Positions 9,676 through 61,043 of a stretch of DNA of 64,000 nt are shown here, piece by piece. This DNA comes from Rhodosorus marinus CCMP1338 (lineage: Eukaryota; Plantae; Rhodophyta): contig JAMWBK010000008.1 in assembly GCA_029953675.1 (NCBI GenBank), forward strand, positions 868,001 to 932,000, read 5' to 3'. Below the pieces are notes generated by a model. The model worked only from the letters and a program-made list of their open reading frames with translations. It was not told where the DNA came from and did not search any database. Position 1 is the first letter of the stretch. The number at the start of each line of letters is the position of its first letter. The translations under genes were made by a program, and so were the position numbers.

Positions 9676-10992
9676 TCCGTCTCCAAAGTCCTCCTACCAC
9701 CCGACGCTACTCAAAACCCCAACCCACGGCCAATGACGCACATCCCCTCGCTTGTCAAGCATCAGCTAAGATATACCTTCCCAACAAAACGCACCTTTGA
9801 AAAAGGTCCACTAAAACATTGCGGACGAAGAACCAACACAGCAGTCAAGTCTACCGCTTCAACCCCACTCGCCCGCCACGTCAGGAGAAATAGCACGAAG
9901 AAACCACCAACCCCCCACCGGCCCCCACCGTTCCCACTCTTAAGCTACTAATAATAGGCACCCCCGAAACCTACGTTGCTCTCAACCATCAACCAAAACA
10001 CCACAAAAAAACAAAAAAAGGGAGGCCGCACACATGCAATAGCCGCTCCTGATTCACAAAGTCGCCCACTCCTTCCTTCCCCTCAAAGCACAACGGACAG
10101 CCAAAACAAAAAAAAACAGAAACACCAACTAAAAACAAAACCACCAAACTACCCTAACCTTAAGCCAACACGTCCCAATCCTCAACACGCATCAGGCCAA
10201 GTCTTGAATACTCCCTATACATATATAAAAGGTCAAGAGAGAAAGTCATGTTTTAAAAAAGCAATCAAACCTGTTCAACTTTTCTTCCCCCATCTCTTCT
10301 CCCAACCCCCCCCCCCAAACCCGCACCCCCGACCCACCTCCTTCCTCCCTCTCCGTCCTCAACCCCAGCAACCCCCGAAAAAAATCCCAATTATGGAAAG
10401 ACCTAACCCATTCCAACAACAAATTTTAAAAAAATCCCCAGCGCTCTTCCTCAAACAAAAAACCAATTTAATCCGATTCTCAAAAAATCTGGTTTAAATA
10501 TATGAAAAAAGTGAAGGTCACGCGCCCCCCTTCTCTTTCCATCTCCTGACAGTTAAGAGAATCTAAAATTGCATTTAAAATTTTCCGTTACTACGTATAA
10601 ATTGCTCTATTCTTGTCCCGAGTATTTTGTATCTTCGTTTAAGGGGTAGGGTACACTCTCTTATTTGGTTATTGAGGATGTGTGAACGTTGTTTTTATTA
10701 TAAAAAGAGTGAGGTTTGGTGACATCCTCGGTACCCTGCTTCCTACCCAGCCGTAAGGGAGGGGAGGAGTGAGGATTTAAAATATTTTGGAAAATATTTA
10801 GATCATGATAATGTACGGAGGGACGTGCGGACTGGAGAAATATAAAAGAGAGCTGGTTTTGTATGTTAATATCTGTATTTTGAGGAATTGATGATTTAGC
10901 TACCCCTTGTAGAAAAGTGGAGGAATTGCCTCTGTAATCAAATCGTAGCCAATGGATTTATGTAAATTTTGAAACTGGGCGATGGCGAGGCT

Positions 10993-11047
10993 GACCAAAC
11001 AGACGGCTTTCAGTGCAAGACTTGTACTGAAAGCCGTCTGTTTGGTC
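10993..11047. repeat. Perfect 22-bp inverted repeat (hairpin)
   Basis: gaccaaacagacggctttcagt / actgaaagccgtctgtttggtc, with further internal caag/cttg pairing. Confidence 0.95.
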
Positions 11048-14000
11048 TGTTAGTATCGGGTTAGTTACGTATTGAGCAAGCCAGTTCGGATGTGTCGGGT
11101 TCGGATGTGTCGGTTAGGGGGAGGTTGTCGTTTCTGAACTGACTCTGATGGCTTCACAAGCCTCTGCATACCTTCAGACGATTTTTCAGCTTAATTCTCC
11201 TTGTTAAGAGTGCCACATTCTCAATATTGATTTGTTGAATTCCCCTGGCTAGGGACAAGCAGCAGTAGAGCATTTGAGGGATGCTCGCTATGCGGAAGTG
11301 TGCGTCCATGACGACACGCGAGGTTTGTTTCTGTTGCTTGCAACTCAGTTGACTGGATAAAGAGTAAAAAAAAGCGATGCCGTTCGGTAAATTGTGTTAC
11401 AGTGCTAGGGCCTGATTGCTGCCCCTGTAGACATCGACTATTGGGAAGCCGATTGTATGCTCGCGTACAGCTTAGTCGGCGAAGAGAAAAGACCATCTCC
11501 AGGTTGTGCTCCATTCGCCAACTCGATCCCCTACGTAGTTTCGCTTCGAGCAGGTGTTTGAGGCACACCCCAGCCAAGAGCTTGTCTTCCTGCGAGAAAG
11601 TAGATGAGGAAATGGCCTGTGCACAGTCTTCAAAACCCACAAGCGAGAATGCTTCCTCAAAAAGCTGGACACTATAGAAGGAAGTTCATCTAAATAAAGG
11701 CAAAATATGTCTAAAATAAAAGCCCAACAATTTTTTATAATTTCTCAAGTAGTGAAGTGAAGGATCCTTGCAATATACCATATATTTAGGCTGCCTGACG
11801 CAACCCGGGACGGTGTTTTTTCTTAGAAAAAATTTGAATTTCAAGTTTTCAGGGCCTTGATTAGGCCAAGAGACCCCTCAGCGGATTTGCATCACTTGGC
11901 CCAAACGCAGTCAATTGGTGTCAGCCGTTCTGTGGAAGAAACCACTGGTCTCCTTGCTCAATAGTGGTCAGTGCAAAAACACAATTGAAAGGAGGGGGAC
12001 GGGGAGCGTTCGTGTTGCTGCACTAGAACAGGAGTCCGACAACGCCGAATTGCTCTCTGTCCGCGACATTGTCCACTGAGCGAGATGCGTTCGATGTCTG
12101 GGGTTACGACCATGTCGCTCGGTCTATGAAGATGATGAGAAGAAAGCTTCCACGTCCTCCCTGATCAGGCAGAGAAGTTCGAATAGAGCGTCTCATCTCT
12201 AGCATTAAGTGCGGCATCTACTAAGCCACCAGCATTGACGAATCTGAAAAGTCTACGGGGAACCTCGCTTTGAGTACTAAAAGCATCGAATAATGGGACA
12301 GGTTCCGCTGAACACGGCATCTATACTCGGCCACTGACCACAAACCAATCCACGACCACTCTTCTCATCAAGGCCGACGTCTAGTCCTAGTGACTCAAGT
12401 CCCAGCCCACACTAAGTTCCGCCGCGCAGAAAAGCTCAGGGTTCCGCTTTTTTCTCAACATCCTTCCCAAACGACGAGGATTCCGGCTCCATCCATTCAC
12501 AATCATGCAAATGCATCGGATCCGCAGATTTTCTACACCCAACACCAAAAACACCAAAAAACCAAGCGGAACTTGCCAGCTTTGGTCCATCCAACATCTC
12601 TCGCGGGGAAATCTCTCCCTAAAAACAAAAATTTTCCGAATCGGCCATTCTATTACTTACCAATCCATTCCACAAAACCCTAGTAACACAACTACCATTC
12701 CCAACTACTCACGAACCCCCCCCCTCCCAACCCTCCCTTCCCGCAGGGAATATCGCCAAAAGGGGGGGTGTGTTCACGCATCAATCCAGCTGACACTTAA
12801 AAAAGAGAAACCCATCCATAACAGAAAGGCGCCTACCCAAACAAAACCTCAAAATTTCAAACATAAGCTCGGTTAGTCAAACCATTCATTAAACCTACAA
12901 TTACAAACAATATCCTCGTTTCTGTTGACGAAGACAAAAATCATAAATCAAAAAGGCCCACGGTGTCTCACGATTGATCAACTTGCATCTTTGAAATATG
13001 GGTATAATAGAAATAAAAAAGGCTATAGTACGTTTTCATTGGCTTAATACTTTTTCTTACCTGGTCGATCTTTGCTGTGAGTGGATCGTTGCACACAAAG
13101 GGGGGTATCGCTCAAGCAAGTTTCTCCCAATAGGGGTCCTTACTTGTGGTTTCGGGGCAATCCTACCACTTCATGAAGGACCAAATTTCCCAACCCCCAA
13201 AAGCTACATGAAAATCCAAGGTGTGAGATTCCGCGCCTGATTCATGAAGGCACACCGAATCCTTAACCCATATTTTATCACCTCACGCAGTACCCCTTTC
13301 CTAATATCATATCGATTTTAGACAAAACTTTACTAGGGGTTAATAGAATATTACTATTCATTTAGGGGTTATCATACTGCACCCATCCTGAGAGTGAACA
13401 TGGTTACGGGGGGTAAAACAAACAGTTAAAACGTAGAATAGCCTTATTTACTTTTGTAATAAATATATAATGCACTATCTTTCATGGGGTAAAAATAGCA
13501 TGCAATTTCTTTTCATTCTTAAGACGGGTATAGAAGTATTTTATGATTAGTCTGTGTTTTAAGGGGTGGAATCAAGGACAGTTATGGAATGTTCGAAGAA
13601 GAAAAGGGGGATATTTGTTTTTGTTTGTTTTGTTTGTGCTTGGGCTTGTTTGAAAAAGTGAGGGCTATCTAGTGGAAAGGCTGTTTTGGGGGTCTTTTGG
13701 CGCTGAAGGGGTTGAGGGACGTGATAATATAATTCCTTCGGGGTATCCAAGAGGCGAAGGGGGGTGGCGCGGTAATTTGAGTGGCAAGCTAGAAGAATAA
13801 GGGGGGGGTGGGTGTTGGGGTTTTGCTGGGTAACGAGATTGGCCTTTGAGGAAGGAAAGGGGGGGTAAGGTTGCACGGGGTTATTGGAATCTTGTTGGTG
13901 AAGAAGTTCGTTGAAGACATTTGGGTAGTAAAAATTTTGTGTGTATTTGTGTTGTGGTCGAAGCTGCGCATTTCGTGGTTTGTGCGTTTTGACTTTGGAA

Positions 14001-36054: not shown

Positions 36055-36297
36055 CGTTACTTGCCTCCAAAAGCCTTCTCCTGTCTCCCAAACAAAAGTT
36101 AAACTGCTTGACATGAACAGAGAGGGGCACATTCATTGAAGATGTCTTCGAATCCATCATCGCCTCCGTCGATAAAAGTAAATCTCAATATCCTTTTCAT
36201 CCACATCGACTTTAAAAAGTTCTATTGAAAACAACATCGATAGGTCGATGAGTCCGGGCTCTGGGACAGGACAGCCTGTCCTCCTCGTTTGGCAAGT

Positions 36298-36596
36298 TGT
36301 TACGTCCTGGCCGAACAAGGAGTGTAGCCCAAAACAAGGCTAATAATAGATACGTCTAGATCTAATAATAGTACTCTAGCAAACCCAGGACATGAACCGG
36401 AAGCCTATAAATACGGAAGCTACGACCTTCCGTCTTAGGCCTAGAGCTGGTCCTCTAGCTAGTCCTCTAGCTAGTCCTCTAGCTAGTCCTCTAGCTCTAA
36501 TCCAGTAGGGTATCCAAGATAGATAAAAGACAAAAACAAAAAAGGGAATTTAAAATTATTTTGGATCACCGACACGCGTTAATGGGGAACGCGTCA
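36298..36596 (+). repeat. 5' LTR, with TATA-like CTATAAATA and a 4x12-bp internal tandem repeat at 36446-36493
   Basis: Homologous to 39330-39585 and to the solo LTR at 54213-54456. Confidence 0.95.
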
Positions 36597-36737
36597 AGTG
36601 GTCTCATCGCATGAGTTGCGATTGAGGAACATGAATGAGCCCAGAACCTGAAAACCTGGAAACCTGACAACCTAACAACCTAACAACCAGAAAAAAAAAC
36701 CAAAAAATTAAATAAATAACAATCTGACAACCAGAAG

Positions 36738-37235
36738 ATGACATCACTCATCAAGATTCAGGCTCCGCAGCCGGAAGCCTACGACGGGCGACGCGACGCC
36801 TTGCTCATCACTACGTTCCTGAACAGCCTGAGAACTTATTTCAAATTAGCGAGACTTCCCGACGACGATGACGAATACAACATTACCCTGCAGAAGGGTA
36901 TTTGACGGGTGATGCCTCCTACTGGTGGTCACTACTTCCCGACCACCAGAGACCAATGACATATGAAGGGTTCGAGCATACGCTCAAAGCCCAGTTCTAC
37001 CCAGCGGACGCCAAGATCCGTGCGAAACAGCAACTCGCAAAGGCGGAGCAGAGAACGACGGTAGCAGCCTACTCGGCTTACTTCAATAAATGTCTGATCC
37101 AGGTCGGAGCAATTTCGGATTCGGAGAAATTTGACAGACTTGTCGAAGGCCTGAAACCGGACGTCAAGCGGTACATCTATATACAAGATGTTACAACATT
37201 CGAGGAGGCTCAAAGACAACCTTCCAGAAGGGAAG
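36738..37235 (+). pseudogene. gag remnant (frameshift near 36890)
   Basis: PQPEAYDGRRDA...YLTGDASYWW...LKAQFYP...TVAAYSAYF...FVEGLKPDVK is a retrotransposon gag pattern. Confidence 0.85.
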
Positions 37236-37630
37236 CGAAACTTCCCTTCTGGAAGGTTGACTGTCCATCTCAGCGCCTTCGATTTTTAGAGCCAGAGTTT
37301 GAGCCTCCTCGAATGTTGTAACATCTTGTATATAGATGTACCGTTTTACGTCCGGTTTCAGGCCTTTAACCAATTCTTCAATCTCCTTTCATGGTTGACC
37401 AATAGTACTTCCTTTTCAAGTGGCCTCCGGTTGGCTTTTCATGGTAGCTCCGTAAAAGAGCGGGTACGAGACGTTCCGGAACGCAAGTCCTGTTATGCAA
37501 GAACAGGGTATCGTTCCTTCGCGTGAAACCTTGGGCAGCATACTTCTGGTCTTCCCGTAACACCTCACTGAATTCTGGGTCCTGAAGGTAAGCCTGCTGC
37601 CAGTTGAGGTCGCTGTTGATCGACGAAATT

Positions 37631-39263
37631 TTCGGACGCCGAAACAAGGTATTCAACGTACGAGCAGGAGTTGTACGCGCTATCAGCAGCAATCTTACAC
37701 TGGAAGGTGTACTTGGAGGGCACCCGATTCACCGTAAGAACCGACCACAACGGGCTGAGGTTCTTACACTCCCAGAAGGAACTTACGAAACGTCAAGCGA
37801 GATACATAAACCGGTTGATACCGTTCCAGTTCACTGTCGAGTACAAGAAAGGCAAGGAGAACATCGCCGATGCGTTAAGTCGACATGCCATCCACCACTT
37901 GGCAATTTCGTCGATCAACAGCGACCTCAACTGGCAGCAGGCTTACCTCAGGACCCAGAATTCAGTGGGGTGTACCGGGAAGACCAGAAGTACGCTGCCC
38001 AAGGTTTCACGCGAAGGAACGATACCCTGTTCTTGCATAACAGGACTTGCGTTCCGGAACGTCTCGTACCCGCTCTTTTACGGAGCTACCTTGAAGAGCC
38101 AACCGGAGGCCACTTGAAAAGGAAGTACTATTGGTCAACCATGAAAGGAGATATTGAAGAATTGGTTAAATCTTGCAAGATTTGTCAGCGGCAAAAACCA
38201 ATACGAACTGCAGCAGGAACATTACAACCACTACCAATTCCAGACGGGAAATTTCAATCCGTATCGATGGATTTTATTACTAACCTACCTGTGACACCGG
38301 ACGGGTTCGACGCGATCTTCGTGATTGTCGATCGGTTCACAAAGTATGCCCGTTTCCTACCTACAACGACAACGGCGACGGCGCAACAAACCGCGAAGCT
38401 GTTCTTACGTCATTGGGTTAGGTTCGCTGGTATACCTAGAGACATCATTTCTGACCGAGACCCAAAATTTACGGGATTTTTCTGGAGGGAATTGTTGAAG
38501 ATGCTGCAAGTAAGGCAAAACCTGAGTACAGCATATCATCCACAGACAGACGGACAGACAGAGCGAATCAATCAGACGCTGGAGACGTACCTGAGGTGTA
38601 ATTCGTCTGCAACGAATTGGGCAGAAGACCTACCGATTGCAGAGCTGGTGTATAATCGTCAGATCTCGGAAGCGACGCAGTTTTCCCCTTTCGAGTTGAC
38701 TTATGGAAAGAACCCGACACTACCTCCCGACCTTAAAGTACCAGATGACCGAGACCGTTCGCTACCAATACCTGAAGCCGCCACGGTCCTCCTACAACGC
38801 CAAAAGGACCAACCTAGCCCGCGCCAACCTACGATATGCCCAAGAACGCCAACGCTTCTACTATGATCGAGGCAAAAGAGACCTCCACTTTGAACCAGGC
38901 GAATATGTGCTCTTGTCAACACGGAATCTTCAGCTCCCAGATTCAAACTATAAAATTCTACGAAAAATTGGTAACGTAGCATGTGAGATGGAGCTCCCGG
39001 GAGATTCTCAACTACATGATGTTTTCCATGTCTCGCTATTACGGACGTTCAATGGACCGGAACCTGAAGGCTCGCATGTAGTTCCTGCATTACAACCAGA
39101 CATACCACAGCGCGAGTTGAAGTCAGTTTTGGGACATCGTCGAGATGAAAAGAACCTGAATGAATACTTCGTTTACTTTGAAGGCGAGACAACGGACGAT
39201 TTGAGATGGTTACCCTACCATCAACTACCGCAGAACCAGAATACCAAGAAACAAATCCGGTAG
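37631..39263 (+). pseudogene. pol remnant: RNase H C-terminal part, integrase (zinc finger partly deleted, DDE core) and chromodomain, with frameshifts
   Basis: YSTYEQELYA...FTVRTDH...ENIADALSR; YYW...CKICQRQK; SMDFITNL; IISDRDPKF; TAYHPQTDGQTER; ELKSVLGHRR...EYFVYFEG...RWLP (chromodomain-like). Confidence 0.92.
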
Positions 39264-39329
39264 TATACAAACCTCCACAAGGCAGCTTCTTCTTCCACCG
39301 GATAGTTCTTTCTTTCAGTGGGGAGGAGT

Positions 39330-39585
39330 TGTTACGTCCTGACAAAACAAGTCAGCCGTCAGGAGTGTAGCCCAAAACAAGGCTAATAATAGATCGGTCT
39401 AGATCTAATATAGTACTCTAGCAAACCCAGGACATGAACCGGAAGCCTGTAAATGCGGAAGTTACGACCTTCCGTCTTAGGATTAGAGCTAGAGAAGGGA
39501 ATCCAAGATAGATAAAAGACAAAAACAGAAAAGGGAATTTAAAATTATTTTGGATCACCAACACGCGTTAATGGAGAACGTGTCA
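39330..39585 (+). repeat. 3' LTR
   Basis: Begins TGTTACG after the PPT and ends GTGTCA before the TSD CAAGT. Confidence 0.95.
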
Positions 39586-40978
39586 CAAGTCGTCTTATGG
39601 CGCTTGGGAGACCGGCCTTGGGGAGACTTGGCAGTTGCGCCAACTCCGGAAGACACCGTGGAGGTAGAGGAGTACTTTTGTGGAAATCCAGGAGAGAAAA
39701 TTCAGTTGTGGGCTCGACTCTGGGGCAGACCTGTTTTGCGATCCGAACAGGCTGAAAAGGAAGGCAACGGTCTGGTTGCAGATATCGCAGAGTCGAGTTG
39801 TGGATCGCTGAGCCAGTCTGGCTCCAGTTGTTGTATTGATTCTTCGGAGACTGGTTGGGGATCTCCCGATATCACCTAGTCTGTGAACGAAAGCATGATG
39901 GGCCTTAACCTTTATGAGTCTTCCTTTTGGGTGCGTAACTTCTTGTACTGGTACGCAACACGTCTTATCGTCAGGGACTGCGAACTTGAAGTACCAAAAC
40001 CTGGAAGATTGGGTGCCTCTTCAGTGAATTGCTGAGAGGGTGTGAGCCTAGGGTTGAAAACCTGTGGCGTTGACTGAAGGAGCATCCAATATTTGCAACT
40101 TTTATCCTTGATTGTCGCCGATATAGACCTGCGCAGAAGCCACTGAGGACAAACGGCCTTGTCCAGATCTTTTACTTCGCCGGGTATGGTCCTCGCAGCT
40201 ACTAATGCAGTTTTCCCTCGTTCATGCTGGTTTCTCTTGAATCGCTGAGAATTGGATAGCGCAAGCCCACATCGGCTTCGGCGGATAAACTACAGTGCCT
40301 TGAGGAGGATATTTACCCAGATCCTAGTTCTTAATCCAGTCTAAGAACGATAAACCTCTACAAAATAAACCCCAACTCTGGCACACAAACCACCAACCCC
40401 CCCCCCCCCCGGGGCACCAGTTTTAGCCGGGTTTAAAAGGTTTTGGGAGGCATTTGTCAGTTTTTCAATTAACCGCTGAAAAAATTGGATACCAGCAAGC
40501 CCACATCGAGCTTCTGCGGTTAAATTATCTTGGCTGGAGGAGGATAGTCATCCACCCTAACCGTAACCTTCCGCTTAAGAGTAGGTTGCGGACCGCGGCC
40601 CCGTCACATCATCCATGCACAAAAAAAAAGCATTGTTTTACCGGTTTTTATTCTTTTTTGATGGTTTTCAGAAGCTTTCCATTAAGCGATTGTAAAATTC
40701 AATGGAATGAAACATATTCGAAGTTGGCAAACGGAGCGAAGGGATTAGGGGGAGGATTTCTAGGGAGAAGAGGGCGGGGGGGGGAAGTGATATACAGTGG
40801 AGAGGACGCAAACAGATTTGTACGAGTTGGTGAAGAAGCTCTATATGATAATTAAAGGGCTAAATTGAGGAACCCTGGTTGTGAGTTGTCGTGTGGGATC
40901 ATAGAGGAGTGGTATCGTTTTGAGTGGTTTTGTTGAAGGAGAATATACGTACACTTTTGAGTGGGTTGTTTTTTTTCG

Positions 40979-48779: not shown

Positions 48780-50102
48780 TCACTTAAATTGACCAGTTCG
48801 TTTTCGAACGGGAATTGCGAATCCTCTTCTCTGTAGGGACACGAATTTGTCCCTTACCAGATTACCCTTCACCTTTGTCCGTCTAAGGTCTTTGCCAAGC
48901 TCTTCAGTGAGAGGAACAATGATCTCACGATCAGGAACCTTCCTCCCCGCAATCCTCCTACGAACTACCTCTCGGCGCATCTTCTTTACCTGTGGGAGTG
49001 TACAGAGCGAAGAGAAGACTAAGTTGGCTACAAGCCAGACGGATTGAGCTTCTCGAGCAATCTGATTACCTTGTCTGCATCTGGACGCGCGCTCTCGTCT
49101 ATTTCTTTTTCAATTTCCTCAATACGTTCAATGTCACCTCGCAGCTTTCTCTTAGCTTTTCGAAGTTCAGACTCCTGCTCCGAATGCTTTCTACGCATTT
49201 CGCGATTCCTTTCCGTACGAGTTTTCTTCTCAGGAGCTGTCTTTGAGGGGGCAGGACCATCTTCCGCTTCGTCAGGTTTGGTTTCCGTGACGTGCTCGGA
49301 GGTAGTTGCTTCGTCGTGTTCGGTCTCGCCGACATAGAGTTTCTCACGCACCCAGTCCCTTTCATGTTCACGCCTTACCACTTGCGATACAGCTTCTCCT
49401 AGCAAGTCCTGGTGGTCGTGAAAGGAGGGATTTATGCTCGCTCCTGCTGGTGCAACTTGGTCACGCGTTTGTCTCCCGCTTGCACCTGCGAACAGCCGTG
49501 CAAGAATTGAAAGCTTGTTATCATCTGAAACTAAAGACCAACAGATATCAGCCCATTGGCATGTACGCTGCTGTGAACAAACCTTCGTCGTCCAACGGCA
49601 GGTTCTTCTTCTTGACTGGAAGCTTCCACCAGTTCCCCACATCCGCATCTTCCTCTGGCACGCTCCACACATCGTAGCGATTGCGAGACTGGGAAGGCTT
49701 TCTCTTCCTTTTCTGAGTCCAGGTTTCCTTTGCGATTGACTTCTTTACTATCTTCTGGTCAGCGTTTGGAATTCCGTCCTTCAACGGCTTCGAGGCCTTA
49801 AACTGCTTTTCGTCTGGAATTGCCTTGATATTATCGTTGGGAATCAGAGCAGCCTCGCTCCGACGCACTTTTTGTCCGCGTAGTTTCCCTTTCTCATCTT
49901 TGTACAGTTTCGTTCTCAGCTCCTCCTTGCCCGTGGGCTGTTTGTCCGTAAAATATAGCTCGCTGTCCTTAGCTTGCTCAGCCTTCCTACCCAACGCCCT
50001 AACCTCAGCCTCCGCTGCCAGAGCATCATCTTCAATTCTCTCAATGGCAGCATTAGCCCGCTTGATACGCTTCTTTCCCGTTCCTTTCTTCACCTTAACC
50101 AT
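48780..50102 (-). CDS. NOP53: Ribosome biogenesis factor NOP53/GLTSCR2; complement(join(48780..48989,49070..49485,49583..50102))
   Basis: ELYFTDK, YDVW, APAGASINPSFHDHQDLL, KKTRTERNR and the C-terminal LRRTKVKGNLVRDKFVSLQRRG. Confidence 0.88.
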
Positions 50103-51584
50103 GGCGAAGCACTTAAAGCTTTGGCGTCAAAACAGAGCCGACTGATCTACCCCCCTAAAAAAACAACAACCAATAGATTCCAAGAAAACACAGAAAAGCG
50201 AGTAAAACACAGCTTCGAGCCAGTTATAGGCTCACTCTCAAATATCAGTACAGACGGCTTCGCAAGCTAACTCAACCTACTAAAAGCCTTTGCGTCACCA
50301 ACAACCCTCCGCTACTCCAAAACAGTTCCGCCATGTGCCGCTGAGCGGCGTCCGATGAAGATGGCAAATACTTAAAAATATCTAAACAAATCGTTAGATA
50401 TTACGAATTTTGATCTTAAGTGAAACTATCTTTACATATCTGAAATATACTGGAAGATATCTTGGATGCTAGTTGGATTGGTGACGAGGAGGAACGACTG
50501 TGCTGGTTGGTACGACTAATTTCTGTGTGCGTAGAGCGTGTTTACCTGCGTACCAGAGCTAGGTAACACGTGGTGGGGATCACGCTCACGTCTCGAACGT
50601 TCGAACGCTGGCTTATCCTCGTGTTTTCTGGTGTGGTCTATTGCGAGCGGCGTGGATTCGAGGATGTAGTGGAATATGTGACCCCTAATCAGAAGCTTAA
50701 TACATGTAGCTGGCATAGGGTAGGGTGGTGGCAAGGGGGTGATACGTATTGACCGCCAAGCATGACTTTATAGACACCTTAGAACGCATTCCGATGAAGC
50801 CCTTCACGCGTTGTGAACCAACCCGAGCACTGATCTGAGGAAAACAGCCATTTGTCAGCTGAACAACACGAGCCAGACGATGGCGACAACCTTGCGAGAC
50901 TTGACCAGGAGTTGCTCCCTTCCTCACATCGAACGTTTCGCAAAGCAGGGGAGAAGAACCGAACGGAGACCCTGAATCCTGTAGTTGAGTACTGACACTG
51001 CACCATGCCGTTTCCATCGGCTCTTCAATCCGAATTCTCATCCCCAAGGACAAAGCTCATAGACCCCCAATTTTCACTAAATTTTGTAAGTTCCTTAACT
51101 CATTCCTATCTATCCAATAATAGAACTTACAATGTTATAGGTGCGTAAATCGTTAAATCATTCGCTAATATACATCAACAACGAACTGAATTAGAACTAG
51201 TGGATAAAAATTACATGAATACATTAAATTCAGAACGCTTACGCTGCTGAATTCGACCACTATCAGTGGGATAACAAAATTTAATCAAAAGACACGAATT
51301 TCTTCTCCTTCCCTCCTGTTGAGATATTCAGCATTTCCAGTCGTGGATTAATTTTATGTCTATATATTGAGCTTGGCGGTGAGGGTTTGGGACGATAGAG
51401 GTGGAGTTGGGAAGAGGACTGTCTGAGGAAGGTCTTTGTAATTTTTGTTTTGTGCGTGGATTTAGAGCAACCGTGAGGTTTAATATATACAGTTTGGTGA
51501 AGTTTGGTTTTCGCAATCTTGAGGAATACGTGTTCATTGGAGTCGTGTTTTTTTCTTAAGAACCTTTTCTGAGAGTAAGGAATA

Positions 51585-52451
51585 ATGGGTTTGTTTAACA
51601 AGGCGAGCACTAAGCAGGCGAAGCCTGCAACCAAGCCGAAGGCGAATACAATGAAGCCTGCGGATTTATCAGGTGAGCGTTTGCGGCGTTAAGATGATGT
51701 GCTTAGGTTTTATGCCCGGGAACTTGCTTTGAAACTGAAAGGTCTGGAATTTTTTTTTGGTTGCGGTTGGTGAAAAACAGAGACGTTGTTTAATATGAAG
51801 TTCACTGCAAAGCAGATGGGCAGGTTAGCGAAGAAAGCTCACTCTTCTATGGAGGCTGAGAAGAAGAAGTGTAAGCAAGCAATCGAGCAGTCTAACGTGG
51901 AAGGGGCCAAAATTCACGCCGAAAACGCTGTGAGGAACGAAAAACAGGAAATTTCATACTTGAGGTAATGGCTCTTGAGCACCTGCTTTGGTTTTGCTTT
52001 CGGAATGAATTAAGTCTGATTCGGGTCTGTTTATCTGGGTTTCTTTAGGTTGCAATCGAGACTTGATGCTGTTGTTTCGAAATTGGAAGCCCACACCAAG
52101 ATGATGACGGTGACTGCCTCGATGGGAGATGTTTCCAACAAGTTGGACGAGGCGTTGCAGACAATGGACATTAATAAGATCACAGCTGTGATGGACACCT
52201 TCGAGAAACAGTTTGAGAACCTGGATTTGAACGCCCAGTACATGGACGGCGCCATTGGAGAGTCTGTGGCTTCTTCCGTACCACAAAACGAAGTCAACAC
52301 GCTACTGCAACAGGTGGGAGAGGAGCATAATTTGGAGGTCAATGAGATCATTGGAGGTCCGAAGATTCCCGGAACGAAGACCGGGCAGCCGAGTAAAGAG
52401 ACTAACCCAGGAGAAATTGATACCCTGGAGGAGAAGTTGAGGAACCTGTAG
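51585..52451 (+). CDS. CHMP1: ESCRT-III CHMP1/Did2/Vps46; join(51585..51672,51781..51964,52049..52451)
   Basis: LFNMKFTAKQ, GAKIHAENAVR, YLRLQSRLDAV, MDTFEKQFENLD, VPQNEVNTLLQQV and a C-terminal MIM-like LEEKLRNL. Confidence 0.93.
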
Positions 52452-52972
52452 AGAACTCTGGGCTATTGCCTGATTTATTATACCTCTCGGAAGCAGCTAC
52501 TGCATTTACGTTGTTGATGAGTTTTTAATCGCTTCATTATTTGCGATGTTATCGACCGCTGAGGAAGCCTCAGACCATTCGTGGCGACCATGCATCAAAT
52601 CGCGAACATTGTGAAGCGTTTACTTCGCTCATATCAGTATATAAAGATTTGCAAATGACGACTGACGAGTGGACCATCAATTCCTTCATGACTTTTCTTG
52701 TAAGGGCCTCAGCTCCTGCGAATTACGTTTTGCCGTAGTTGGATCCCAACCATACAGGCACTTGTGGTTGGACATTCTTTCCTGAGGTCCGTTTAGACTC
52801 ATATGTGCATACTACATGTCCCAGTGACGATCGAGGCTCCCACAACTCTACATGAAACACTGAACCGCATTCTCCCGTGGGAATCACCTCCGAGTGCCTT
52901 CGCTCCCAAGCCGGGCAGGGGACATTAGAAGTAAAGAACCATGTATAAGACCGGCTTGGCAACTTGGAAATC

Positions 52973-53045
52973 TAGTATGAGCCGGGATCGAACCGGCGAC
53001 CTTAAGATCTTCAGTCTTACGCTCTCCCAACTGAGCTATCCCGGC
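52973..53045 (-). tRNA. tRNA-Phe(GAA)-derived sequence with a defective 3' acceptor strand (probable pseudo-tRNA)
   Basis: GCCGGGATAGCTCAGTTGGGAGAGCGTAAGACTGAAGATCTTAAGGTCGCCGGTTCGATCCCGGC has intact D, anticodon and T arms and intact A/B boxes. Positions 66-72 read TCATACT and do not pair with GCCGGGA. Confidence 0.85.
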
Positions 53046-53216
53046 TATCCGTGCTCTTTGGAGGCAAAGTCCCTGGTCGCTTCCGTCCCTGGACGACACA
53101 CGGGACTTGACTTACACAGGTACCGAGCTATCCCGGCTATCCGTGCTCTTTGGAGGCAAAGTCCCTGGTCGCTTCCGTCCCTGGACGACACACGGGACTT
53201 GACTTACACAGGTACC
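53033..53216. repeat. Exact 2 x 92-bp tandem duplication
   Basis: The unit gagctatcccggctatccgtg...cttacacaggtacc occurs at 53033 and 53125. Confidence 0.97.
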
Positions 53217-53979
53217 GACGTAAAAAAAACAACAGGCTGCACCACAAATCGCTTGCAATATATATAGCGATTTCTTCCTCTCACACCTTTTGGTCCTGAA
53301 CGGCAGGTTTGGGCATATGAGAGTACGAAACTTGCTATCAAAGGAGCAAATGGACGTGGAAGCTGAAAACGCTCCTCTTGTCTGCCAGTACTCGAGTCTC
53401 GGATCGCTTCAAGAATCGTGGCTATTGCACGAGTTCAAGACGAGCCTTAGTTCACGCAAGGGCGGCGGAATCAGAGCAAATAGAGCCCCAATACAACTCG
53501 TGTGGCCAACTGTTGAACAGGTGCGCACGAGCCTGGCGGGCTACAGCTCTGGGGGCTCGCTTCCATGTCCGCAGAGAAACTTGAAACCGTTCTTGTCACC
53601 CCTGTTTCATCGATGGGACGGGTCGGCAAGCAACCGCACGGAAGCGATGCCGCACATAAAAACGTATCTCAGACACTCTGACGGGAAGCTTCACTTCTTC
53701 ATGCTGACCTCCGCCAACCTGTCCGGCGCGGCTTGGGGGAAACTTGAAAAAGGTGGAAGTCAACTATTCGTACGCTCCTATGAGCTGGGTGTACTTTTCC
53801 TTCCCTCTTTCTACACGGAGTCATCGTTCTCCCTCTCCGCGAGCCGACCCTGCCGTGGATTGTCCGACGGCAAATACGAATTTTCCGGTCCAGTCAGCAC
53901 GCGATTCCAGCGGATGAACCTGATGATTGCGAAGTTTGCAGTAAATGCGATACGATCAAACACCGATTTCCCCTCTTAA
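53046..53979 (+). pseudogene. TDP1: 5'-truncated tyrosyl-DNA phosphodiesterase 1 (C-terminal half only)
   Basis: SLVASVPGRHTGLDLHR joined by an intron (GT at 53120 or 53212, AG at 53306) to FGHMRVRNLL...CQYSSLGSL...LVWPTVEQVRTSLAGY..GGSLP...MPHIKTY...LTSANLSGAAWG...SYELGVLF. The first catalytic HKN half is not found upstream. Confidence 0.88.
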
Positions 53980-54212
53980 GTACTCGAGTAGCCTTGTGTT
54001 TGGAAAAGTCATGACCTTGGTCCCGCCAAGACGTGCTCCGGCATGGATGAGATGGCCAGCGCAAGCGAAAGATTTTTTTTTAGGTAGTTATAGTAGCAGA
54101 CGAGTTTTAGTGGTTTTCCATAACAAGCCCACTACGGACTGCGGACGAGGTTGCAGCTCAGCCTACACTCTTATCGCTATCAGTCGTTTATCCATGTCAG
54201 CCTGACCCTGCT

Positions 54213-54456
54213 TGACACGTCCTCCATTAACGAGTGTCGGTGATCCAAAATAATTTTAAATTCCCTTTTTGTTTTTGTCTTTTATCTATCTTGGATAGCT
54301 CTAATCCTAAGACGGAAGGTCGTAACTTCCGTATTTATAGGCTTCCGGTTCATGTCTTGGGTTTGCTAGAGTACTATTATTAGATCTAGACTTATCTATT
54401 ATTAGCCTTGTTTCGGGCTACACTGCAGACGGCTGACTTGTTCGGTCAGGACGTAA
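54213..54456 (-). mobile_element. Solo LTR of the same gypsy family
   Basis: The reverse complement matches both LTRs. It is flanked by CTGCT (54208-54212 and 54457-54461). The terminal CA appears lost through a 2-bp deletion. Confidence 0.93.
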
Positions 54457-54808
54457 CTGCTCTCGCCACAACCACCACATTTGCTTCTTCAGCACAATCT
54501 GTCCTACGGTATCGTTGACGACAAGAAAAATGAAAAATGAATAAAATTAAGCTGGTTCTTTTTGGCTTGAGGTTTTCTGATCTAAAAACTGAGGTTTTAC
54601 TGTTTTTGGAGTGTTCGCTTCAGGGTTGATGGCGGCAAGAGAGAGGGAGAAAGGCAAGTCGAGTTCATCAGTCTTTGGGAAGAGGAGGGGCTTTAAGCAG
54701 TTAAGGATCGACTATTGTGACTGATAGATCTGCAGTCCACAATCCTAGGATACGTATTTCATTGATCCTTTTGAATTAGTTTTGGTAGTGTAAATTATTT
54801 TGGCAGTG

Positions 54809-56059
54809 ATGGGTCATCGAAGGAGGATGCCGAAGAGTGATGGTGGGGAGCAGCGGATCGATTCCTTCATGATGAAGGGCGGCAGCGCTTTGGAGGTCGA
54901 GCCAGTGGTGAAGGATTTCGTAGGTGGAGGTAATGCAGTGAAGGAAGAGGAAGGTCCTCCTGCTGAAGTTCAGCCCCCGGTTAATGTGGATCAGGCTGGG
55001 GAAACGCAGGACAGTCTCTTCGGTAAGCAATATGTTTGGTTCAGTAGCAGGTGCTGGAATGCTGCCCAGGTTTAGCAGATTAAAGACCGGTTTCGTTGCT
55101 GTTAGACGATGACGCTGGCTTAGGGAAAGACGAATTGGTCGTGAAGTTCGATCCGGATCCGGAGCAGGATGAAGATGCGAATGCGACGCAGGTGATGGGT
55201 GAGGATGAGATCGTTGAATCGAGCATACTGCAGAGCAAGATAAAATCCGTAAGTGACCTACCTTGCAACCACCTGACCTCCTATGGGAGGTGTTGCTTAC
55301 TGGAGCACTGTTTTCATCCTGCAGAACACCATTCCTCTCATCTGCCCTCCGAAGTTGGAAGAGAACTTGGTCCTTGCGCAGTCTGCTGACGTTTCTTTTG
55401 ACCTCAGCGGGGATGTTGGCGCTGTTGGAAGGGTTAAAATTGAAGAAGGGAAACTCAGCTTCGATCTGAAAGGTACGGGGAAAAAACTGCAGCATGAAAG
55501 CTCTACGTGCGGGTACAAACGGTATCTCAGTTGCAATGCCTGTCCGGATCGCATTCGTAGGAACGTTTTATGATGCTGGCAGAGTAGCTTGCAACTCGAT
55601 GCTGGTTGTTGCTGTTGGGGACACGGAGGCGAGGGTGAGCTCTGTCATCGATGAGTATCTTCTCCTGACGGAGAGTACCGAAGACACCGGGGGAGAGAAG
55701 GTTTTGGCAGGTAACGTCGATTTTGGTACAGAGGATCAGGAGGTTCTTAACAGTTCAGACGCAAAACCGGATGAGAAGGGAACCAAGAAGAGAAAGAAGA
55801 GCGTACGCATGAATACCTTCGAAGGTTTAATTGTAAGAACTCAGTGCGGTCGTCTAACACTCGGGATCATGCTCCTTTCGCTAGGAGCTTGGAAAGGCGG
55901 TTGCCACGGTTCGCGTTAACAAAAAGGCTAGATCGGTAAGTCAAGAAGTCGCTGAACCAGGAACAGGGAATTTCCGTTGCGTACTAACTGTGGGGACTGT
56001 AATATGTGCGATAGGGATCCTCACTCAAGTCCAAGCTGAAGAAAAAATTGAAAAAGTAG
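54809..56059 (+). CDS. BIN4: BIN4/MIDGET-like topoisomerase VI accessory subunit; first exons 54809..55022, 55106..55248, 55325..55472, 55561 onward; 3' exons tentative
   Basis: DLSGDVGAVGRV...FDLKGTFY...MLVVAVGDTEARVSSVIDEYL matches the plant BIN4 core (DLSGDMGAVGR...LDLKGTIY...VV..GQTEAKIEAIMNDF). Confidence 0.8.
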
Positions 56060-56130: not shown

Positions 56131-57400
56131 CTATGTGTACAGATCAAAAATTTCCTTGACAAGGGGATCACTGCCCTCGCGAACTAGATGCTCATTTCGA
56201 ACTTGTCGAATCAAGTCCTCATCGAGGGATTCACCCTCGTCCTCCTCTTCCTCACTATCTGACATTTGCGCTCGTGCTATCTCCTCGGGCTCAACTTCCA
56301 TTGAAGCACCCTGCCGTAGAGACTCCAATTCCTCCGGCAATGGCAAACGTCCGCTGCTGGCCAACTTTGCAGATAATGCCTCAGAATCATCTACGTTTAA
56401 TTCGCAAGATTGCTTCCGTTGAACGACATCTTCTTGAGCAAAGCTAGGCAACTTGGACCCTGTCGTATCTAGCTCAGAGCTCTTCACCCGCCTGAACGAG
56501 CTCCGCTTCCTTATTCGAAAAGGTATCTTCCGAACCCCACCGTCCTCCTGGCCCCTGGGAGATGATTTCCTCATGCTTCTGGAGGTTTCAATCCACGACT
56601 TGCAAAAAATTGAATCTACTGTTCTCCACCAATGCTACTACTCCTTTGTCTCCTATCCCTCAATTCATCAGCCACCATTCCAAACAAGGCCGTAGCAGAG
56701 GTGTGCTCCCCACGCAACCCTGCCAAGTGCCCATCCATTCCAGCCGGAGAACAAGACTCCCGCATTTTCACAAGATCGATGACGTTGACTGAGTTTAGGC
56801 TTAAAAACGCGGGAATCCACGGTAACCACCAATGATTGGATAATAGCTTCCCGCCATCAATCAATAATATATTGATTGAGGTTTGCAGTTGACTGGCTTG
56901 GCTGAAAAGCATTGATCTGTACAAAGGTTGATCACTGCACCACGGCTGGAACCGTATCAATCCTTTGAGTTTTACATGTCTTACCGGCTTTCAACGACCC
57001 GCTTTGGAAGCCCACTCTTCACGGAACCGTTTCCTTTTTGGTGTAGCTTTGCGTTCACGTCGAACTGTATGTTATAGTAATCCCATGACAGAACGAACTC
57101 CTGAGTTCGTTCTGTCATGGGATTACTCCCGCAGCAACGGGTTTCTGCAATAGCTTCCGTGGTGGAACGGACAAGATCCTCTCGAAACCACGTCAGACCG
57201 CTCTCGTTTCTCCCATTCGTAGTCACCCACCGAAAATAGTTTGACGCTGAAGTGCTTGAGAAGTTCGGAACGTTCCGACGTTTCATTCTCGGCAAGGACA
57301 ACGCTGACGGTGGGCGCAGCGTATCAGATCTTGCCTATCAGAATCGATCCAGCTAGAATCGGATGCGTAATGTATCCAAACTACTATTCTCTCCCAACCG
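56131..57400 (-). CDS. Hypothetical multi-exon gene, possibly disrupted near 57100
   Basis: ORFs 56131-56574, 56616-56960 and 56981-57301 are collinear with plausible GT-AG junctions. A G/T-rich sense 5' block lies at 57400-57800. No domain recognised. Confidence 0.45.
57076..57127. repeat. Perfect palindrome with 25-bp arms and a 2-nt loop
   Basis: agtaatcccatgacagaacgaactc ct gagttcgttctgtcatgggattact. Confidence 0.97.
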
Positions 57401-59357: not shown

Positions 59358-61043
59358 ATGGAGGTTGGGACTGAGTTTCTTGACATTTCCCTTGCAAAGA
59401 GAGCCGTGAAGGAATATTGTAGTGTTTCTGTATTGCCTTACTTCGTGGAGAGGAGCGATAAAGGCATTTTTATTGTACGATGCCCCAAAGCTAGGGATGG
59501 GAAGTATTGTCCTTTTAGAATACACATCGCTAGGAAGAGGTCTGGCGCTTTCCACGTGAAAAGACATGTTAAGCACGATGAGTATTGTATTGTGGAACCG
59601 AAGCTCAACCAACTGTTGACCGTTACTGAAGCACGTATCCTGCTCAGCAAGGAGGAAGATGTGGCTGCGAGGGACCTGGTGTCTTCAATCAAAAAAAAAT
59701 ACGCGGTTGATACTCCATACAAGACTGCTTGGAGAGCTCTAGCAATCGCAAAGCACCAATACGCTGTTGAGGATGGGAAGTCCTTCCAGAGGATTTCGGG
59801 CTATCTCGCAGCAGTGAAACGCGAAAATCCGGGAACCTTTGCCGGCGCCGAGAGGACTGACGAGGGCGAGTTTCTTCGGGCTTTTGCTTGCCTGGCGGCC
59901 TCCATCAATGCGATCCAGTTCGCACGCCCAATATTATTTATTGACCGTTTTCAGATTAAATCCAGTTTCGGAGGGACGCTAGTCGGTGCTACGACTCAGG
60001 ATGGCACCGGAGAGACCATACCAATTGCAATCGGACTTTGCCCTATCGACAACGAGGCAAACTGGACTTGGTTTCTGGAAAAGATCTTCATGGCGCTGCC
60101 GGAGCTCAATCGTGGACACGTTACGGTGCTCCATGACAGGAGGGATGGTCTTTCGAGGGCGATTCAAGGCGTGCTGCCCTTGACACATGAAGCAATTTGC
60201 TGCAACGGGTTGGAGAACGAGCTGAAGAATATTTCCAAAAAGTGCATACCTCTGTTTTGGAAAGCGGCTAAAGTCTTCAACCCAGCGTCTTTTACGGAAG
60301 AGATGCAAAGGATTGGCGAGATAAGCCCGGAGGCGTACGAGTTTTTGGTCAAGAGCAAGCCCATTCTATGGTCCACTGCGATGGCATCAGTTTCACGATT
60401 CGGAATAGTCACCGGCACTGCTGCAGAATCGCGAAATTCGTGGTACAAAGAATTTCGAGGGATCGGTCACCTTCGCATCTTGATGAGGTTCGTGGAGAAG
60501 GTTGGAACTGGTCAAGTCAAAGGATCTGCGCGCATGAAGGACGAGTTGGACCGGGTCACGAGAAATACAATGTCGATCTTCAAGGAAAATCTGGCCAAGG
60601 GAAGTCTGCTTCAGCTAACCTCATTCAGCGAAGATGCGTTCATCGTTGCTGATAATGCACTGTCGCAGGCCACCGTAGGACTTGACCGAGTGGTGAAGCT
60701 TAACCAAAAGACATGCTCTTGCGGTGAGTTTCAGATAATGTCTTTCCCTTGTATACATGCGGCCACGGCCATTCAATTCCGAGGGGATGATCCAACTCTG
60801 TACATGCACGAAACGTATCGGGTCAACTACTTGAAGAATGTGTACTCCGTCAAAGTAGTACCAATCGATTTGTACACTGACTCAGGTCCTTGCGATGGGA
60901 TGAAACCTCCAAAAAACGACATCAGAAAGCTGGCTAAGAAGAAAACTAGTCAAGCGACAACCACGACCATGACCGCAAAATCTATAACGTGCTCGAGATG
61001 CGGCAGCACTGGACATAACTCTCGCACGTGCACTGCAAACTAA
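59358..61043 (+). CDS. Mutator-like (MULE/MuDRA-type) transposase, intact ORF, possibly domesticated
   Basis: MuDR-like N-terminus. MULE core FIDRFQIKSSFGGTLVGATTQDG...IPIAIG...NWTWFL...HDRRDGL...TAAESRNS. SWIM finger CSCGEFQIMSFPCIHA and C-terminal knuckle CSRCGSTGHNSRTC. Confidence 0.92.
   Translation: MEVGTEFLDISLAKRAVKEYCSVSVLPYFVERSDKGIFIVRCPKARDGKYCPFRIHIARKRSGAFHVKRHVKHDEYCIVEPKLNQLLTVTEARILLSKEEDVAARDLVSSIKKKYAVDTPYKTAWRALAIAKHQYAVEDGKSFQRISGYLAAVKRENPGTFAGAERTDEGEFLRAFACLAASINAIQFARPILFIDRFQIKSSFGGTLVGATTQDGTGETIPIAIGLCPIDNEANWTWFLEKIFMALPELNRGHVTVLHDRRDGLSRAIQGVLPLTHEAICCNGLENELKNISKKCIPLFWKAAKVFNPASFTEEMQRIGEISPEAYEFLVKSKPILWSTAMASVSRFGIVTGTAAESRNSWYKEFRGIGHLRILMRFVEKVGTGQVKGSARMKDELDRVTRNTMSIFKENLAKGSLLQLTSFSEDAFIVADNALSQATVGLDRVVKLNQKTCSCGEFQIMSFPCIHAATAIQFRGDDPTLYMHETYRVNYLKNVYSVKVVPIDLYTDSGPCDGMKPPKNDIRKLAKKKTSQATTTTMTAKSITCSRCGSTGHNSRTCTAN

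What the first reader, a model, noticed from the sequence alone, without database searches (positions are those of the whole stretch)
52973..53979. tRNA-Phe fused head-to-head, exactly at its mature G1, to an internal TDP1 exon
Seen: the tRNA is canonical from position 1 to about 68, but its 3' acceptor strand is foreign, and its strand has no T4 Pol III terminator for more than 600 bp. The base next to G1 begins YPCSLEAKSLVASVPG, which aligns without gaps to the TDP1 YDFS....LVASVPG segment. The 5' half of TDP1 is missing, yet an intron is retained. G1-T8 can also pair perfectly with the T-arm 3' strand (ATCCCGGC). Established: red algae such as Cyanidioschyzon have disrupted and permuted tRNA genes, and tRNA heads also found SINEs. 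Inference: most likely capture of a mature-tRNA cDNA at a DNA break, or a new tRNA-headed SINE or Pol III ncRNA. A split or edited tRNA is less likely.
Basis: partly seen in the sequence, partly recalled or inferred. Interest (0 to 1): 0.7.

Follow-up and report, generated by a model that had tools for sequence, protein, structure and literature searches.

The report
Patchwork insertion: tRNA-Phe and TDP1 fragments
A dead 65-base piece of a tRNA-Phe gene and a 727-base copy of the middle of the TDP1 gene were pasted together downstream of a CHMP1 gene in the red alga Rhodosorus marinus; this looks like an ordinary scar of DNA-break repair, not a new kind of tRNA gene or mobile element.

Summary
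The window is nuclear DNA of Rhodosorus marinus CCMP1338 (JAMWBK010000008.1). The tRNA-Phe(GAA) signal is real (Rfam 50.7 bits), but only positions 1-65 (perhaps 1-67) are present. It has no acceptor stem, and there is no T4 run for 685 nt on its strand.

The TDP1 part is not a broken resident gene. It is a 727-bp copy of an internal segment of the intact TDP1 gene NDN08_007364 on another contig, with 1 mismatch, no gaps and the intron included. It is cut off at both ends.

Near-identity to the parent starts 24 nt from tRNA G1. The 23 nt in between match TDP1 no better than chance (9/23).

A perfect 92-bp tandem duplication spans the tRNA/TDP1 junction.

Sister strain CCMP769 is colinear with the window through the CHMP1 downstream region. 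That homology stops 4-6 nt before the tRNA piece, so the proposed "SINE body" is native single-copy DNA.

Best reading: a very young multi-fragment ectopic insertion made during double-strand-break repair. It has been annotated as a protein (KAJ8902831.1). Whether the tRNA piece came from a gene or from RNA is unresolved. Interest is low.

The parts
52452..52974 (+). Native DNA downstream of the CHMP1/Snf7 gene, whose stop codon is at 52449-52451. This is the recipient locus. It is probably the CHMP1 3' UTR.
   Evidence: Colinear with the CCMP769 CHMP1 transcript contigs L024/L025 from 51351 to 52968-52974 at 81-82% identity. Homology ends at ...CTTGGAAATCTA. Snf7 Pfam hit.
52975..52980 (.). 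Left junction filler GTATGA. The last two bases (GA) could instead be tRNA positions 67-66.
   Evidence: It matches neither the CCMP769 continuation (CGCAAC...) nor the expected acceptor strand.
52981..53045 (-). tRNA-Phe(GAA) fragment, positions 1-65, with G1 at 53045. The A box and B box are intact. The 3' acceptor strand and the terminator are absent.
   Evidence: Rfam RF00005 at 50.7 bits. ARAGORN finds none. The predicted fold has no acceptor stem. The first T4 run is 685 nt away.
53046..53068 (.). 23-nt spacer TATCCGTGCTCTTTGGAGGCAAA of unknown origin. It may be the 5' flank of the donor tRNA gene, or filler.
   Evidence: 9/23 matches in register with parental TDP1, which is chance level. 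No other copy or local template in the window or the fetched loci.
53033..53124 (.). First unit of the perfect 92-bp tandem duplication. It holds tRNA positions 13-1, the 23-nt spacer, and TDP1 parent positions 10711-10766 including the 5' splice site GTACC.
   Evidence: TRF: period 92, 2.0 copies, 100% matches, score 372. The repeat finder family D1. GA microhomology at the unit borders, read.
53125..53216 (.). Second unit of the 92-bp tandem duplication.
53161..53887 (+). 727-bp DNA-level copy of an internal segment of TDP1: the last 51 nt of exon 1, the 95-nt intron (53212-53306) and 581 nt of exon 2. It carries the second HKD motif only.
   Evidence: Equals L007 10711-11437 (JAMWBK010000011.1, gene NDN08_007364) with 1 mismatch and 0 gaps. 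Pfam profile 193-414 of 445. The first-copy piece 53069-53126 equals L007 10711-10768.
53888..54210 (.). Sequence to the right of the TDP1 breakpoint. Its origin is undetermined: it could be native DNA or a further patch. It supplies the out-of-family ORF tail ...SGPVSTRFQRMNLMIAKFAVNAIRSNTDFPS*.
   Evidence: No similarity to the parental TDP1 locus, to CCMP769 contigs, or to anything else in the window.

Best explanation
This is a very young compound insertion in the region downstream of CHMP1 in Rhodosorus marinus CCMP1338. Most likely it was made when a double-strand break was repaired by end joining that captured ectopic DNA pieces.

Reading the plus strand, the pieces are:
1. 4-6 nt of filler.
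2. An inverted, 3'-truncated tRNA-Phe(GAA) gene fragment, positions 1-65. The adjoining 23 nt is probably that gene's own 5' flank.
3. A 727-bp internal, intron-containing fragment copied from the intact TDP1 gene on another contig.

A 92-bp tandem duplication with GA microhomology then arose across the tRNA/TDP1 joint, either in the same event or soon after. Native sequence seen in the sister strain to the right of the break (at least 145 nt) appears to have been lost.

Neither piece is functional as what it resembles. The tRNA piece cannot form an acceptor stem and has no terminator. The TDP1 piece lacks the first HKD half and the C-terminus. Because the patch lies in sense orientation behind CHMP1, it was probably picked up in read-through transcripts and annotated as a 283-aa 'TDP1'.

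Shown: the anatomy, the donor of the TDP1 piece, its youth, and the left breakpoint relative to CCMP769. Inferred: break repair as the cause, DNA rather than RNA donors, the flank origin of the 23-mer, and the read-through transcription.
For: - The window is GCA_029953675.1 contig JAMWBK010000008.1.
- An intact 506-aa TDP1 (P0122, Pfam profile 21-445 of 445) sits on JAMWBK010000011.1. Its neighbours, cyclophilin and an AMP-binding gene, are the same as at the TDP1 locus of CCMP769.
- Window 53161-53887 equals that gene's 10711-11437 with 1 mismatch in 727 and no gaps, intron included. At the single difference the fragment keeps the base shared with CCMP769, so the parent changed.
- Both flanks of the fragment are unrelated to the parental locus.
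- The CCMP769 CHMP1 contigs are colinear with the window up to 52968-52974 and then diverge, 4-6 nt before the tRNA piece.
- There are unmatched spacers at the junctions, no poly(A), no target-site duplication and no flanking inverted repeats.
- The tandem duplication is perfect.
- The genome paper reports that NUMTs are abundant in this strain and notes that NUMT insertion proceeds by NHEJ. The assembly was made from ONT reads size-selected at 6 kb, long enough to span the whole structure (PMC10250338).
- Class-2 templated sequence insertions in human have the same junction features, and their donors are likewise retained (PMC5110952).
Against: - The right-hand boundary of the insertion could not be fixed, because no CCMP769 sequence was available for that side.
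- The native tRNA-Phe gene(s) of this genome could not be searched, so the origin of the 23-mer and the DNA-versus-RNA question are open.
- No independent assembly or read set confirmed the junctions. Exact-ORF look-ups found nothing.
- Three rounds of Pilon polishing could have pulled the fragment's sequence towards the parent, exaggerating its youth.
- The end of homology with CCMP769 could in principle reflect a change in CCMP769 rather than in CCMP1338.
Confidence: 0.7

Rival explanations
1. The patches were templated by RNA. A run-off cDNA of a mature tRNA-Phe, ending at G1, and a cDNA of unspliced TDP1 pre-mRNA were used to patch the break. This is the reader's preferred idea and matches the class-2 templated sequence insertion mechanism.
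For: - The tRNA piece ends exactly at mature position 1, and what follows is not recognisably anything.
- In the sister strain, intron-retaining TDP1 transcripts are abundant enough to be assembled (P0119/P0121 versus spliced P0118), so the retained intron does not exclude an RNA template.
- Human class-2 TSIs are reported to derive from RNA (PMC5110952).
Against: - The copy is canonical at G26, G37 and A58. In cytosolic tRNA-Phe these positions normally carry m2,2G, wybutosine and m1A, which block or miscode reverse transcriptase. This is established knowledge and was not tested here.
- There is no CCA, and the 3' end stops at 65-67 rather than at the RNA's 3' end.
- There is no microhomology between the left DNA end and the tRNA 3' region that could have primed synthesis (read).
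- The exact G1 end is equally explained if the 23-mer is the donor gene's 5' flank.
Confidence: 0.15
2. It is an assembly or polishing artefact. The 0.9-kb patchwork, or at least the 92-bp duplication, would then not exist in the organism.
For: - The tandem copies are 100% identical and the fragment is 99.86% identical to a distant locus.
- The assembly is ONT-only, made with NextDenovo and polished three times with Pilon.
- No second assembly carries the junction ORFs.
Against: - The structure is far shorter than the reads, which were size-selected at 6 kb, so consensus needs many concordant reads.
- A misjoin through a repeat would carry the parental flanks, and neither flank is parental.
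- The junctions have filler typical of biological end joining.
- The one mismatch that survives argues against wholesale homogenisation.
- The failure of the look-ups is expected, because short-read graphs collapse a 727-bp near-identical repeat.
Confidence: 0.07
3. A transposon captured and moved the fragments, in the manner of a Pack-MULE, a Helitron or similar.
For: - An intact MULE transposase ORF lies 5.4 kb away, at 59358-61043.
- A dispersed ~250-bp repeat starts about 320 bp to the right of the TDP1 breakpoint.
Against: - No terminal inverted repeats bracket 52975-53888, or the wider region.
- There is no target-site duplication.
- The left junction sits directly on native DNA.
- There are no Helitron-type termini (read).
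Confidence: 0.05
4. It is a newborn Pol III unit, SINE progenitor or tRNA-headed ncRNA. The intact A and B boxes would drive a transcript running antisense into the CHMP1 3' region.
For: - The A box (TAGCTCAGTTGG) and B box (GGTTCGATCCC) are intact.
- There is no terminator for 685 nt.
Against: - The 'body' is syntenic single-copy CHMP1 downstream DNA.
- There is only one copy in 64 kb plus 50 kb of other loci.
- There is no tail and no target-site duplication.
- Expression was not tested.
Confidence: 0.03
5. It is a functional split, permuted or edited tRNA-Phe gene of the Cyanidioschyzon type.
For: Red algae are known to have permuted and multi-intron tRNA genes (established knowledge). Positions 1-65 are perfect.
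Against: - The heptamer TCCCGGC does not occur on the tRNA strand anywhere in 50001-56000 except as the T-stem itself.
- The upstream DNA is a days-old copy of TDP1.
- The sister strain has no tRNA at this site.
- ARAGORN finds nothing.
Confidence: 0.01

Closest known systems
Class-2 templated sequence insertions, also called 'patch' or filler-DNA insertions at repaired double-strand breaks (Onozawa et al.; review PMC5110952). NUMT/NUPT capture by NHEJ belongs to the same kind.
   Same: - A short piece copied from a distant locus whose donor stays intact.
- No target-site duplication and no poly(A).
- Unmatched nucleotides at the junctions.
- An accompanying loss of native sequence.
- Several pieces joined in one scar.
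- The host genome is already reported to be rich in NUMTs, and NUMT insertion proceeds by NHEJ (PMC10250338).
   Different: - This case is in a red alga.
- One piece is a tRNA gene fragment.
- A 92-bp tandem duplication overlies the internal joint.
- The RNA origin reported for human TSIs is not shown here.
Partial gene duplicates, or gene-fragment pseudogenes made by DNA-level ectopic duplication.
   Same: - An internal, intron-containing, near-identical fragment of a single-copy gene placed at a non-syntenic site.
- The open reading frame is kept only because the copy is young.
   Different: It is only 727 bp and is joined to an unrelated tRNA fragment. It is not part of a larger segmental duplication.
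Chimeric retrogenes made by LINE reverse-transcriptase template switching (U6 or tRNA joined to mRNA).
   Same: A small Pol III RNA sequence joined to part of a protein-coding gene.
   Different: Those chimeras are head-to-tail in one orientation, spliced, end in poly(A) and have target-site duplications. This one is head-to-head, keeps its intron and has none of those marks.
tRNA-derived SINEs.
   Same: A tRNA-like head with intact A and B boxes and no nearby terminator.
   Different: There is no repeated body or tail. The sequence downstream of the head is conserved single-copy DNA of the CHMP1 locus.

Membership tests
Functional nuclear tRNA gene (tRNA-Phe) | Cloverleaf with a 7-bp acceptor stem | tested here: not met
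   Positions 66-72 (TCATACT) face GCCGGGA. Rfam marks three non-pairs. ARAGORN makes no call. The MFE fold pairs 1-8 with 58-65 instead.
Functional nuclear tRNA gene (tRNA-Phe) | Internal A and B boxes and the GAA anticodon | tested here: met
   Read from the Rfam alignment: TAGCTCAGTTGG, GGTTCGATCCC and anticodon GAA.
Functional nuclear tRNA gene (tRNA-Phe) | Pol III terminator (T4 or longer) shortly after the 3' end | tested here: not met
   The first T4 run on the tRNA strand is 685 nt downstream.
tRNA-derived SINE | Many dispersed copies with a common tRNA-unrelated body and tail | tested here: not met
   There is one copy in the window and none in L001, L007, L024 or L025. The 'body' 52452-52974 is colinear with the CCMP769 CHMP1 3' region. 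The whole genome could not be searched.
tRNA-derived SINE | Target-site duplications flanking the element | tested here: not met
   No direct repeat flanks the structure.
Permuted or split tRNA gene (Cyanidioschyzon type) | The missing 3' acceptor half is present nearby on the same strand, with a bulge-helix-bulge junction | tested here: not met
   The only TCCCGGC on the tRNA strand in 50001-56000 is the T-stem copy at 52981.
Templated / ectopic patch insertion at a repaired DSB (class-2 TSI-like) | The donor sequence is retained intact elsewhere in the genome | tested here: met
   Intact TDP1 NDN08_007364 on JAMWBK010000011.1, with 727 bp at 99.86% identity. The donor of the tRNA piece was not found.
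Templated / ectopic patch insertion at a repaired DSB (class-2 TSI-like) | Absent from the orthologous site of a close relative | tested here: inconclusive
   The left side is met: CCMP769 homology stops at 52974. No relative's sequence was available for the right side.
Templated / ectopic patch insertion at a repaired DSB (class-2 TSI-like) | No TSD and no poly(A), with filler or microhomology at the junctions | tested here: met
   A 4-6 nt spacer and a 23-nt unmatched spacer, GA microhomology at the duplication borders, no A-tract and no TSD.
Processed retrocopy | Introns removed and a 3' poly(A) | tested here: not met
   The 95-nt intron is retained without a gap, and there is no poly(A).
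Pack-MULE / transposon gene capture | Terminal inverted repeats and a 9-10-bp TSD around the captured fragments | tested here: not met
   No inverted repeats bracket the region.
Active TDP1 (HKD phospholipase-D superfamily phosphodiesterase) | Two HKD half-sites in one polypeptide | tested here: not met
   The fragment covers Pfam PF06087 positions 193-414 of 445 only. The first H-x-K (HHTKL in the parent) is absent, and there is no N-half anywhere in the window.

The most novel reading that the evidence does not exclude
The tRNA head keeps intact A and B boxes and has lost its terminator. It could therefore already act as a TFIIIC/Pol III entry site that makes a tRNA-headed RNA running about 0.7 kb antisense through the CHMP1 3' UTR. 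That would be a freshly born SINE progenitor or antisense regulator caught at birth.

Alternatively, the exact G1 end could record repair of a chromosomal break with a cDNA of a mature tRNA.
Probability: 0.08. Interest if true: 0.6.

Novelty: new member of a known kind. Interest (0 to 1): 0.2.

Why it matters
The main value is as a correction.
- GenBank KAJ8902831.1 (UniRef 'Tyrosyl-DNA phosphodiesterase 1') is a model of a dead fragment. Its first 35 residues are antisense tRNA. The real TDP1 of this alga is NDN08_007364.
- It is also a clean, datable example of multi-piece ectopic sequence capture in a red-algal nucleus. That genome is already reported to be rich in NUMTs, whose insertion proceeds by NHEJ.
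- It shows how a tRNA head can be separated from its terminator, which is the first step in models of SINE birth.

None of this changes current understanding.

Tried and rejected
- A slippage deletion between the two TCCCGGC heptamers of an intact tRNA would explain the lost acceptor strand. I rejected this because the base after CCGGC is T, not the discriminator A, and native CHMP1 DNA starts only 4-6 nt further on.
- TDP1 split by an inversion or translocation. I rejected this because the N-half is nowhere in the window and an intact gene exists elsewhere.
- The low dN/dS (0.23 against CCMP769) as a sign of function. It only reflects the parent gene's history, because the copy is 99.86% identical to the parent.
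- A local template for the 23-mer, as in Pol-theta-style snap-back. I found none within 51000-56000 of the window or L007 9000-13000 around the donor segment.
- A search for the empty site by a metagenome scan with CHMP1 found only distant relatives. The 90% cluster of CHMP1 then gave the CCMP769 contigs.
- A protein search with the N-half of TDP1 at E<=1e-10 returned nothing, although the sequence is in the collection. That was a tool miss. A repeat with the full-length protein worked.
- Exact-ORF look-ups for independent assemblies of the junction found nothing.
- An attempt to rebuild the 280-aa downstream gene model, to reach its CCMP769 orthologue, gave 16 ambiguous splice solutions and was dropped.

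Full report
**Identity of the window.** The TDP1-like ORF is 100% identical to GenBank protein NDN08_006151 of Rhodosorus marinus (P0001). That gene lies on contig JAMWBK010000008.1 of assembly GCA_029953675.1, and window position + 868,000 gives the record position. The strain is CCMP1338. It was assembled from ONT GridION reads (6-kb size selection) with NextDenovo and polished three times with Pilon (PMC10250338).

**The tRNA.**
- Rfam finds one tRNA in the 64 kb, on the minus strand at 52973-53042 (50.7 bits against a gathering score of 29, E 6e-8). ARAGORN finds none.
- Read directly, it is tRNA-Phe(GAA) with G1 at 53045. Positions 1-65 (52981-53045) are canonical, including the A and B boxes.
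- Positions 66-72 read TCATACT and cannot pair with GCCGGGA.
- The first T4 run on this strand is 685 nt downstream.
- These parts of the observation are confirmed.

**The TDP1 part.**
- The ORF matches Pfam PF06087 over profile positions 193-414 of 445. That is the second HKD half only.
- tblastn with 116 TDP1 proteins finds no N-terminal half anywhere in the window.
- A search with the full-length TDP1 of strain CCMP769 (P0118) found a second R. marinus CCMP1338 protein, NDN08_007364 (P0122, 506 aa, profile 21-445 of 445), on contig JAMWBK010000011.1.
- That gene has the same neighbours as the CCMP769 TDP1 contigs L001-L003: cyclophilin upstream and an AMP-binding gene downstream. It is therefore the native, intact gene.
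- Window 53161-53887 equals positions 10711-11437 of that locus, with one mismatch and no gap in 727 bp, including the whole 95-nt intron. At the one difference (53207) the window shares its base with CCMP769, so the parent changed.
- To the right, identity stops at 53887/53888, and the conserved C-terminal ~50 residues of TDP1 are replaced by unrelated sequence.
- The TDP1 piece is therefore a very recent DNA-level copy of an internal fragment, cut at both ends. It is not a resident gene that lost its 5' half.
- The dN/dS of 0.23 against CCMP769 only reflects the parent's history.

**The joint with G1.** Near-identity to the parent starts at 53069 (first copy) and 53161 (second copy), which is 24 nt from G1. 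The 23 nt in between (TATCCGTGCTCTTTGGAGGCAAA) match the parent at 9/23 in register, a level reached by about 10% of random 23-mers of the window. They have no other copy or local template in any sequence I could reach. The 'YPCS' to 'YDCS' alignment is therefore not evidence, and 'fused exactly at G1 to a TDP1 exon' is not supported. The simplest reading is that the 23-mer is the 5' flank of the donor tRNA-Phe gene. In that case G1 is not a breakpoint.

A perfect 92-bp tandem duplication (53033-53218, 2.0 copies, 100%) repeats tRNA positions 13-1, the 23-mer and the first 56 bp of the TDP1 piece, which includes its 5' splice site. The units are bordered by GA microhomology. The duplication is younger than the tRNA/TDP1 joint, or arose in the same event.

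**The left flank.**
- The 90% cluster of the upstream CHMP1 protein contains CCMP769 members. Their contigs, L024 and L025, carry about 700 nt after the stop codon.
- They are colinear with the window from 51351 to 52968-52974 at 81-82% identity, then diverge completely at ...CTTGGAAATCTA. That point is 4-6 nt before the tRNA piece.
- The 145-nt CCMP769 tail, which contains an AATAAA, has no match anywhere in the window.
The tRNA piece arrived already truncated as part of the insertion.
- No tRNA is present in L024/L025, in L001, or in the 21.6 kb fetched around the parental TDP1 locus (L007).

**Anatomy on the plus strand.**
1. Native DNA up to 52974.
2. GTAT(GA), 52975-52980.
3. tRNA-Phe positions 65 to 1, antisense, 52981-53045.
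4. The 23-nt spacer, 53046-53068.
5. The TDP1 fragment, with the 92-bp duplication laid over the joint, up to 53887.
6. Sequence of undetermined origin from 53888.

There is no target-site duplication, no poly(A) and no bracketing inverted repeats.

**Mechanism.** These features are those of ectopic 'patch' capture during end-joining repair of a double-strand break: several short pieces from distant loci, donors left intact, unmatched nucleotides at the joints, and loss of native sequence. Human class-2 templated sequence insertions are described in the same terms (PMC5110952). The genome paper reports unusually abundant NUMTs in this strain and notes that NUMT insertion proceeds by NHEJ. I take this as the best explanation: confidence is about 0.9 for the anatomy and about 0.6 for the mechanism.

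**DNA or RNA donors.** This is open.
- The retained intron does not exclude RNA, because intron-retaining TDP1 transcripts are assembled in CCMP769.
- For the tRNA, an exact G1 end would fit a run-off cDNA.
- Against that, a fully canonical copy through G26, G37 and A58 argues against a mature template. These positions carry RT-blocking modifications in cytosolic tRNA-Phe (established knowledge, not tested here).
- There is also no CCA, and the flank explanation is simpler.

**Rejected readings.**
- An assembly artefact is unlikely. The structure is much shorter than the reads, and neither flank is parental.
- Transposon capture lacks TIRs and TSDs, although a MULE transposase ORF and a dispersed repeat are nearby.
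- The SINE reading and the split-tRNA reading both fail their defining tests.

**Consequences.** The tRNA piece and the TDP1 piece are both non-functional as such. The BRAKER model KAJ8902831.1 starts at an ATG at 52941, reads 35 codons of antisense tRNA, and splices the TDP1 intron. The patch lies in sense orientation where the CHMP1 3' UTR runs in the sister strain, so CHMP1 read-through transcripts probably supplied the RNA-seq support. That last step is inference.

**Verdict.** This is a real but ordinary structure, a new example of a known kind. Its value is mainly as an annotation correction and as a datable repair scar. The only reading with real novelty is a newborn Pol III unit, or repair with a tRNA cDNA. 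I rate that at about 8%.

Noticed in passing
window 54211-54469 (+), 39318-39601 (-), 36295-36610 (-): A dispersed repeat family of about 250-310 bp, 88-95% identical in its core. The copy at 36 kb carries an internal short tandem array. The flanks of the three copies are unrelated. It could be a MITE, a SINE or a solo LTR. One copy starts about 320 bp to the right of the TDP1 breakpoint.
   Followed up: partly
window 59358-61043 (+): An uninterrupted 561-aa MULE-type transposase ORF with MuDR DNA-binding, MULE and SWIM domains. This element may still be active.
   Followed up: no
window 52941-53979 (+): GenBank KAJ8902831.1 (NDN08_006151, named TDP1 in UniRef) is a mis-annotation. Residues 1-35 are the antisense translation of tRNA-Phe, and the rest is a truncated TDP1 fragment lacking the first HKD motif. 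The true TDP1 is NDN08_007364.
   Followed up: yes
window 37365-37630 / 37904-38170; also 10993-11047, 37146-37366, 57076-57127: A pair of 266-bp inverted arms at 96.6% identity and several perfect or near-perfect palindromes. They may be transposon termini or hairpin-forming repeats.
   Followed up: no
L001 about 2398 (CCMP769 TDP1 contig): The JGI contigs of CCMP769 carry one extra T in TDP1 exon 2 relative to CCMP1338 and to the MMETSP protein P0118. This splits the called ORF and is probably a transcriptome-assembly error or a variant isoform.
   Followed up: partly
L025 1468-1612 (CCMP769): The 145 nt after the breakpoint in the sister strain contain a D-arm-like hairpin (GTGCTCAGTTGGTTCGAGCAC) and an AATAAA. 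There is no Rfam match, and no counterpart in the CCMP1338 window.
   Followed up: partly
Homologous-protein tool behaviour: The word-indexed protein search missed the 517-aa CCMP769 TDP1 and the intact CCMP1338 TDP1 when queried with half-length sequences, but found both with the full-length query. Absence of hits from that tool is weak evidence.
   Followed up: yes
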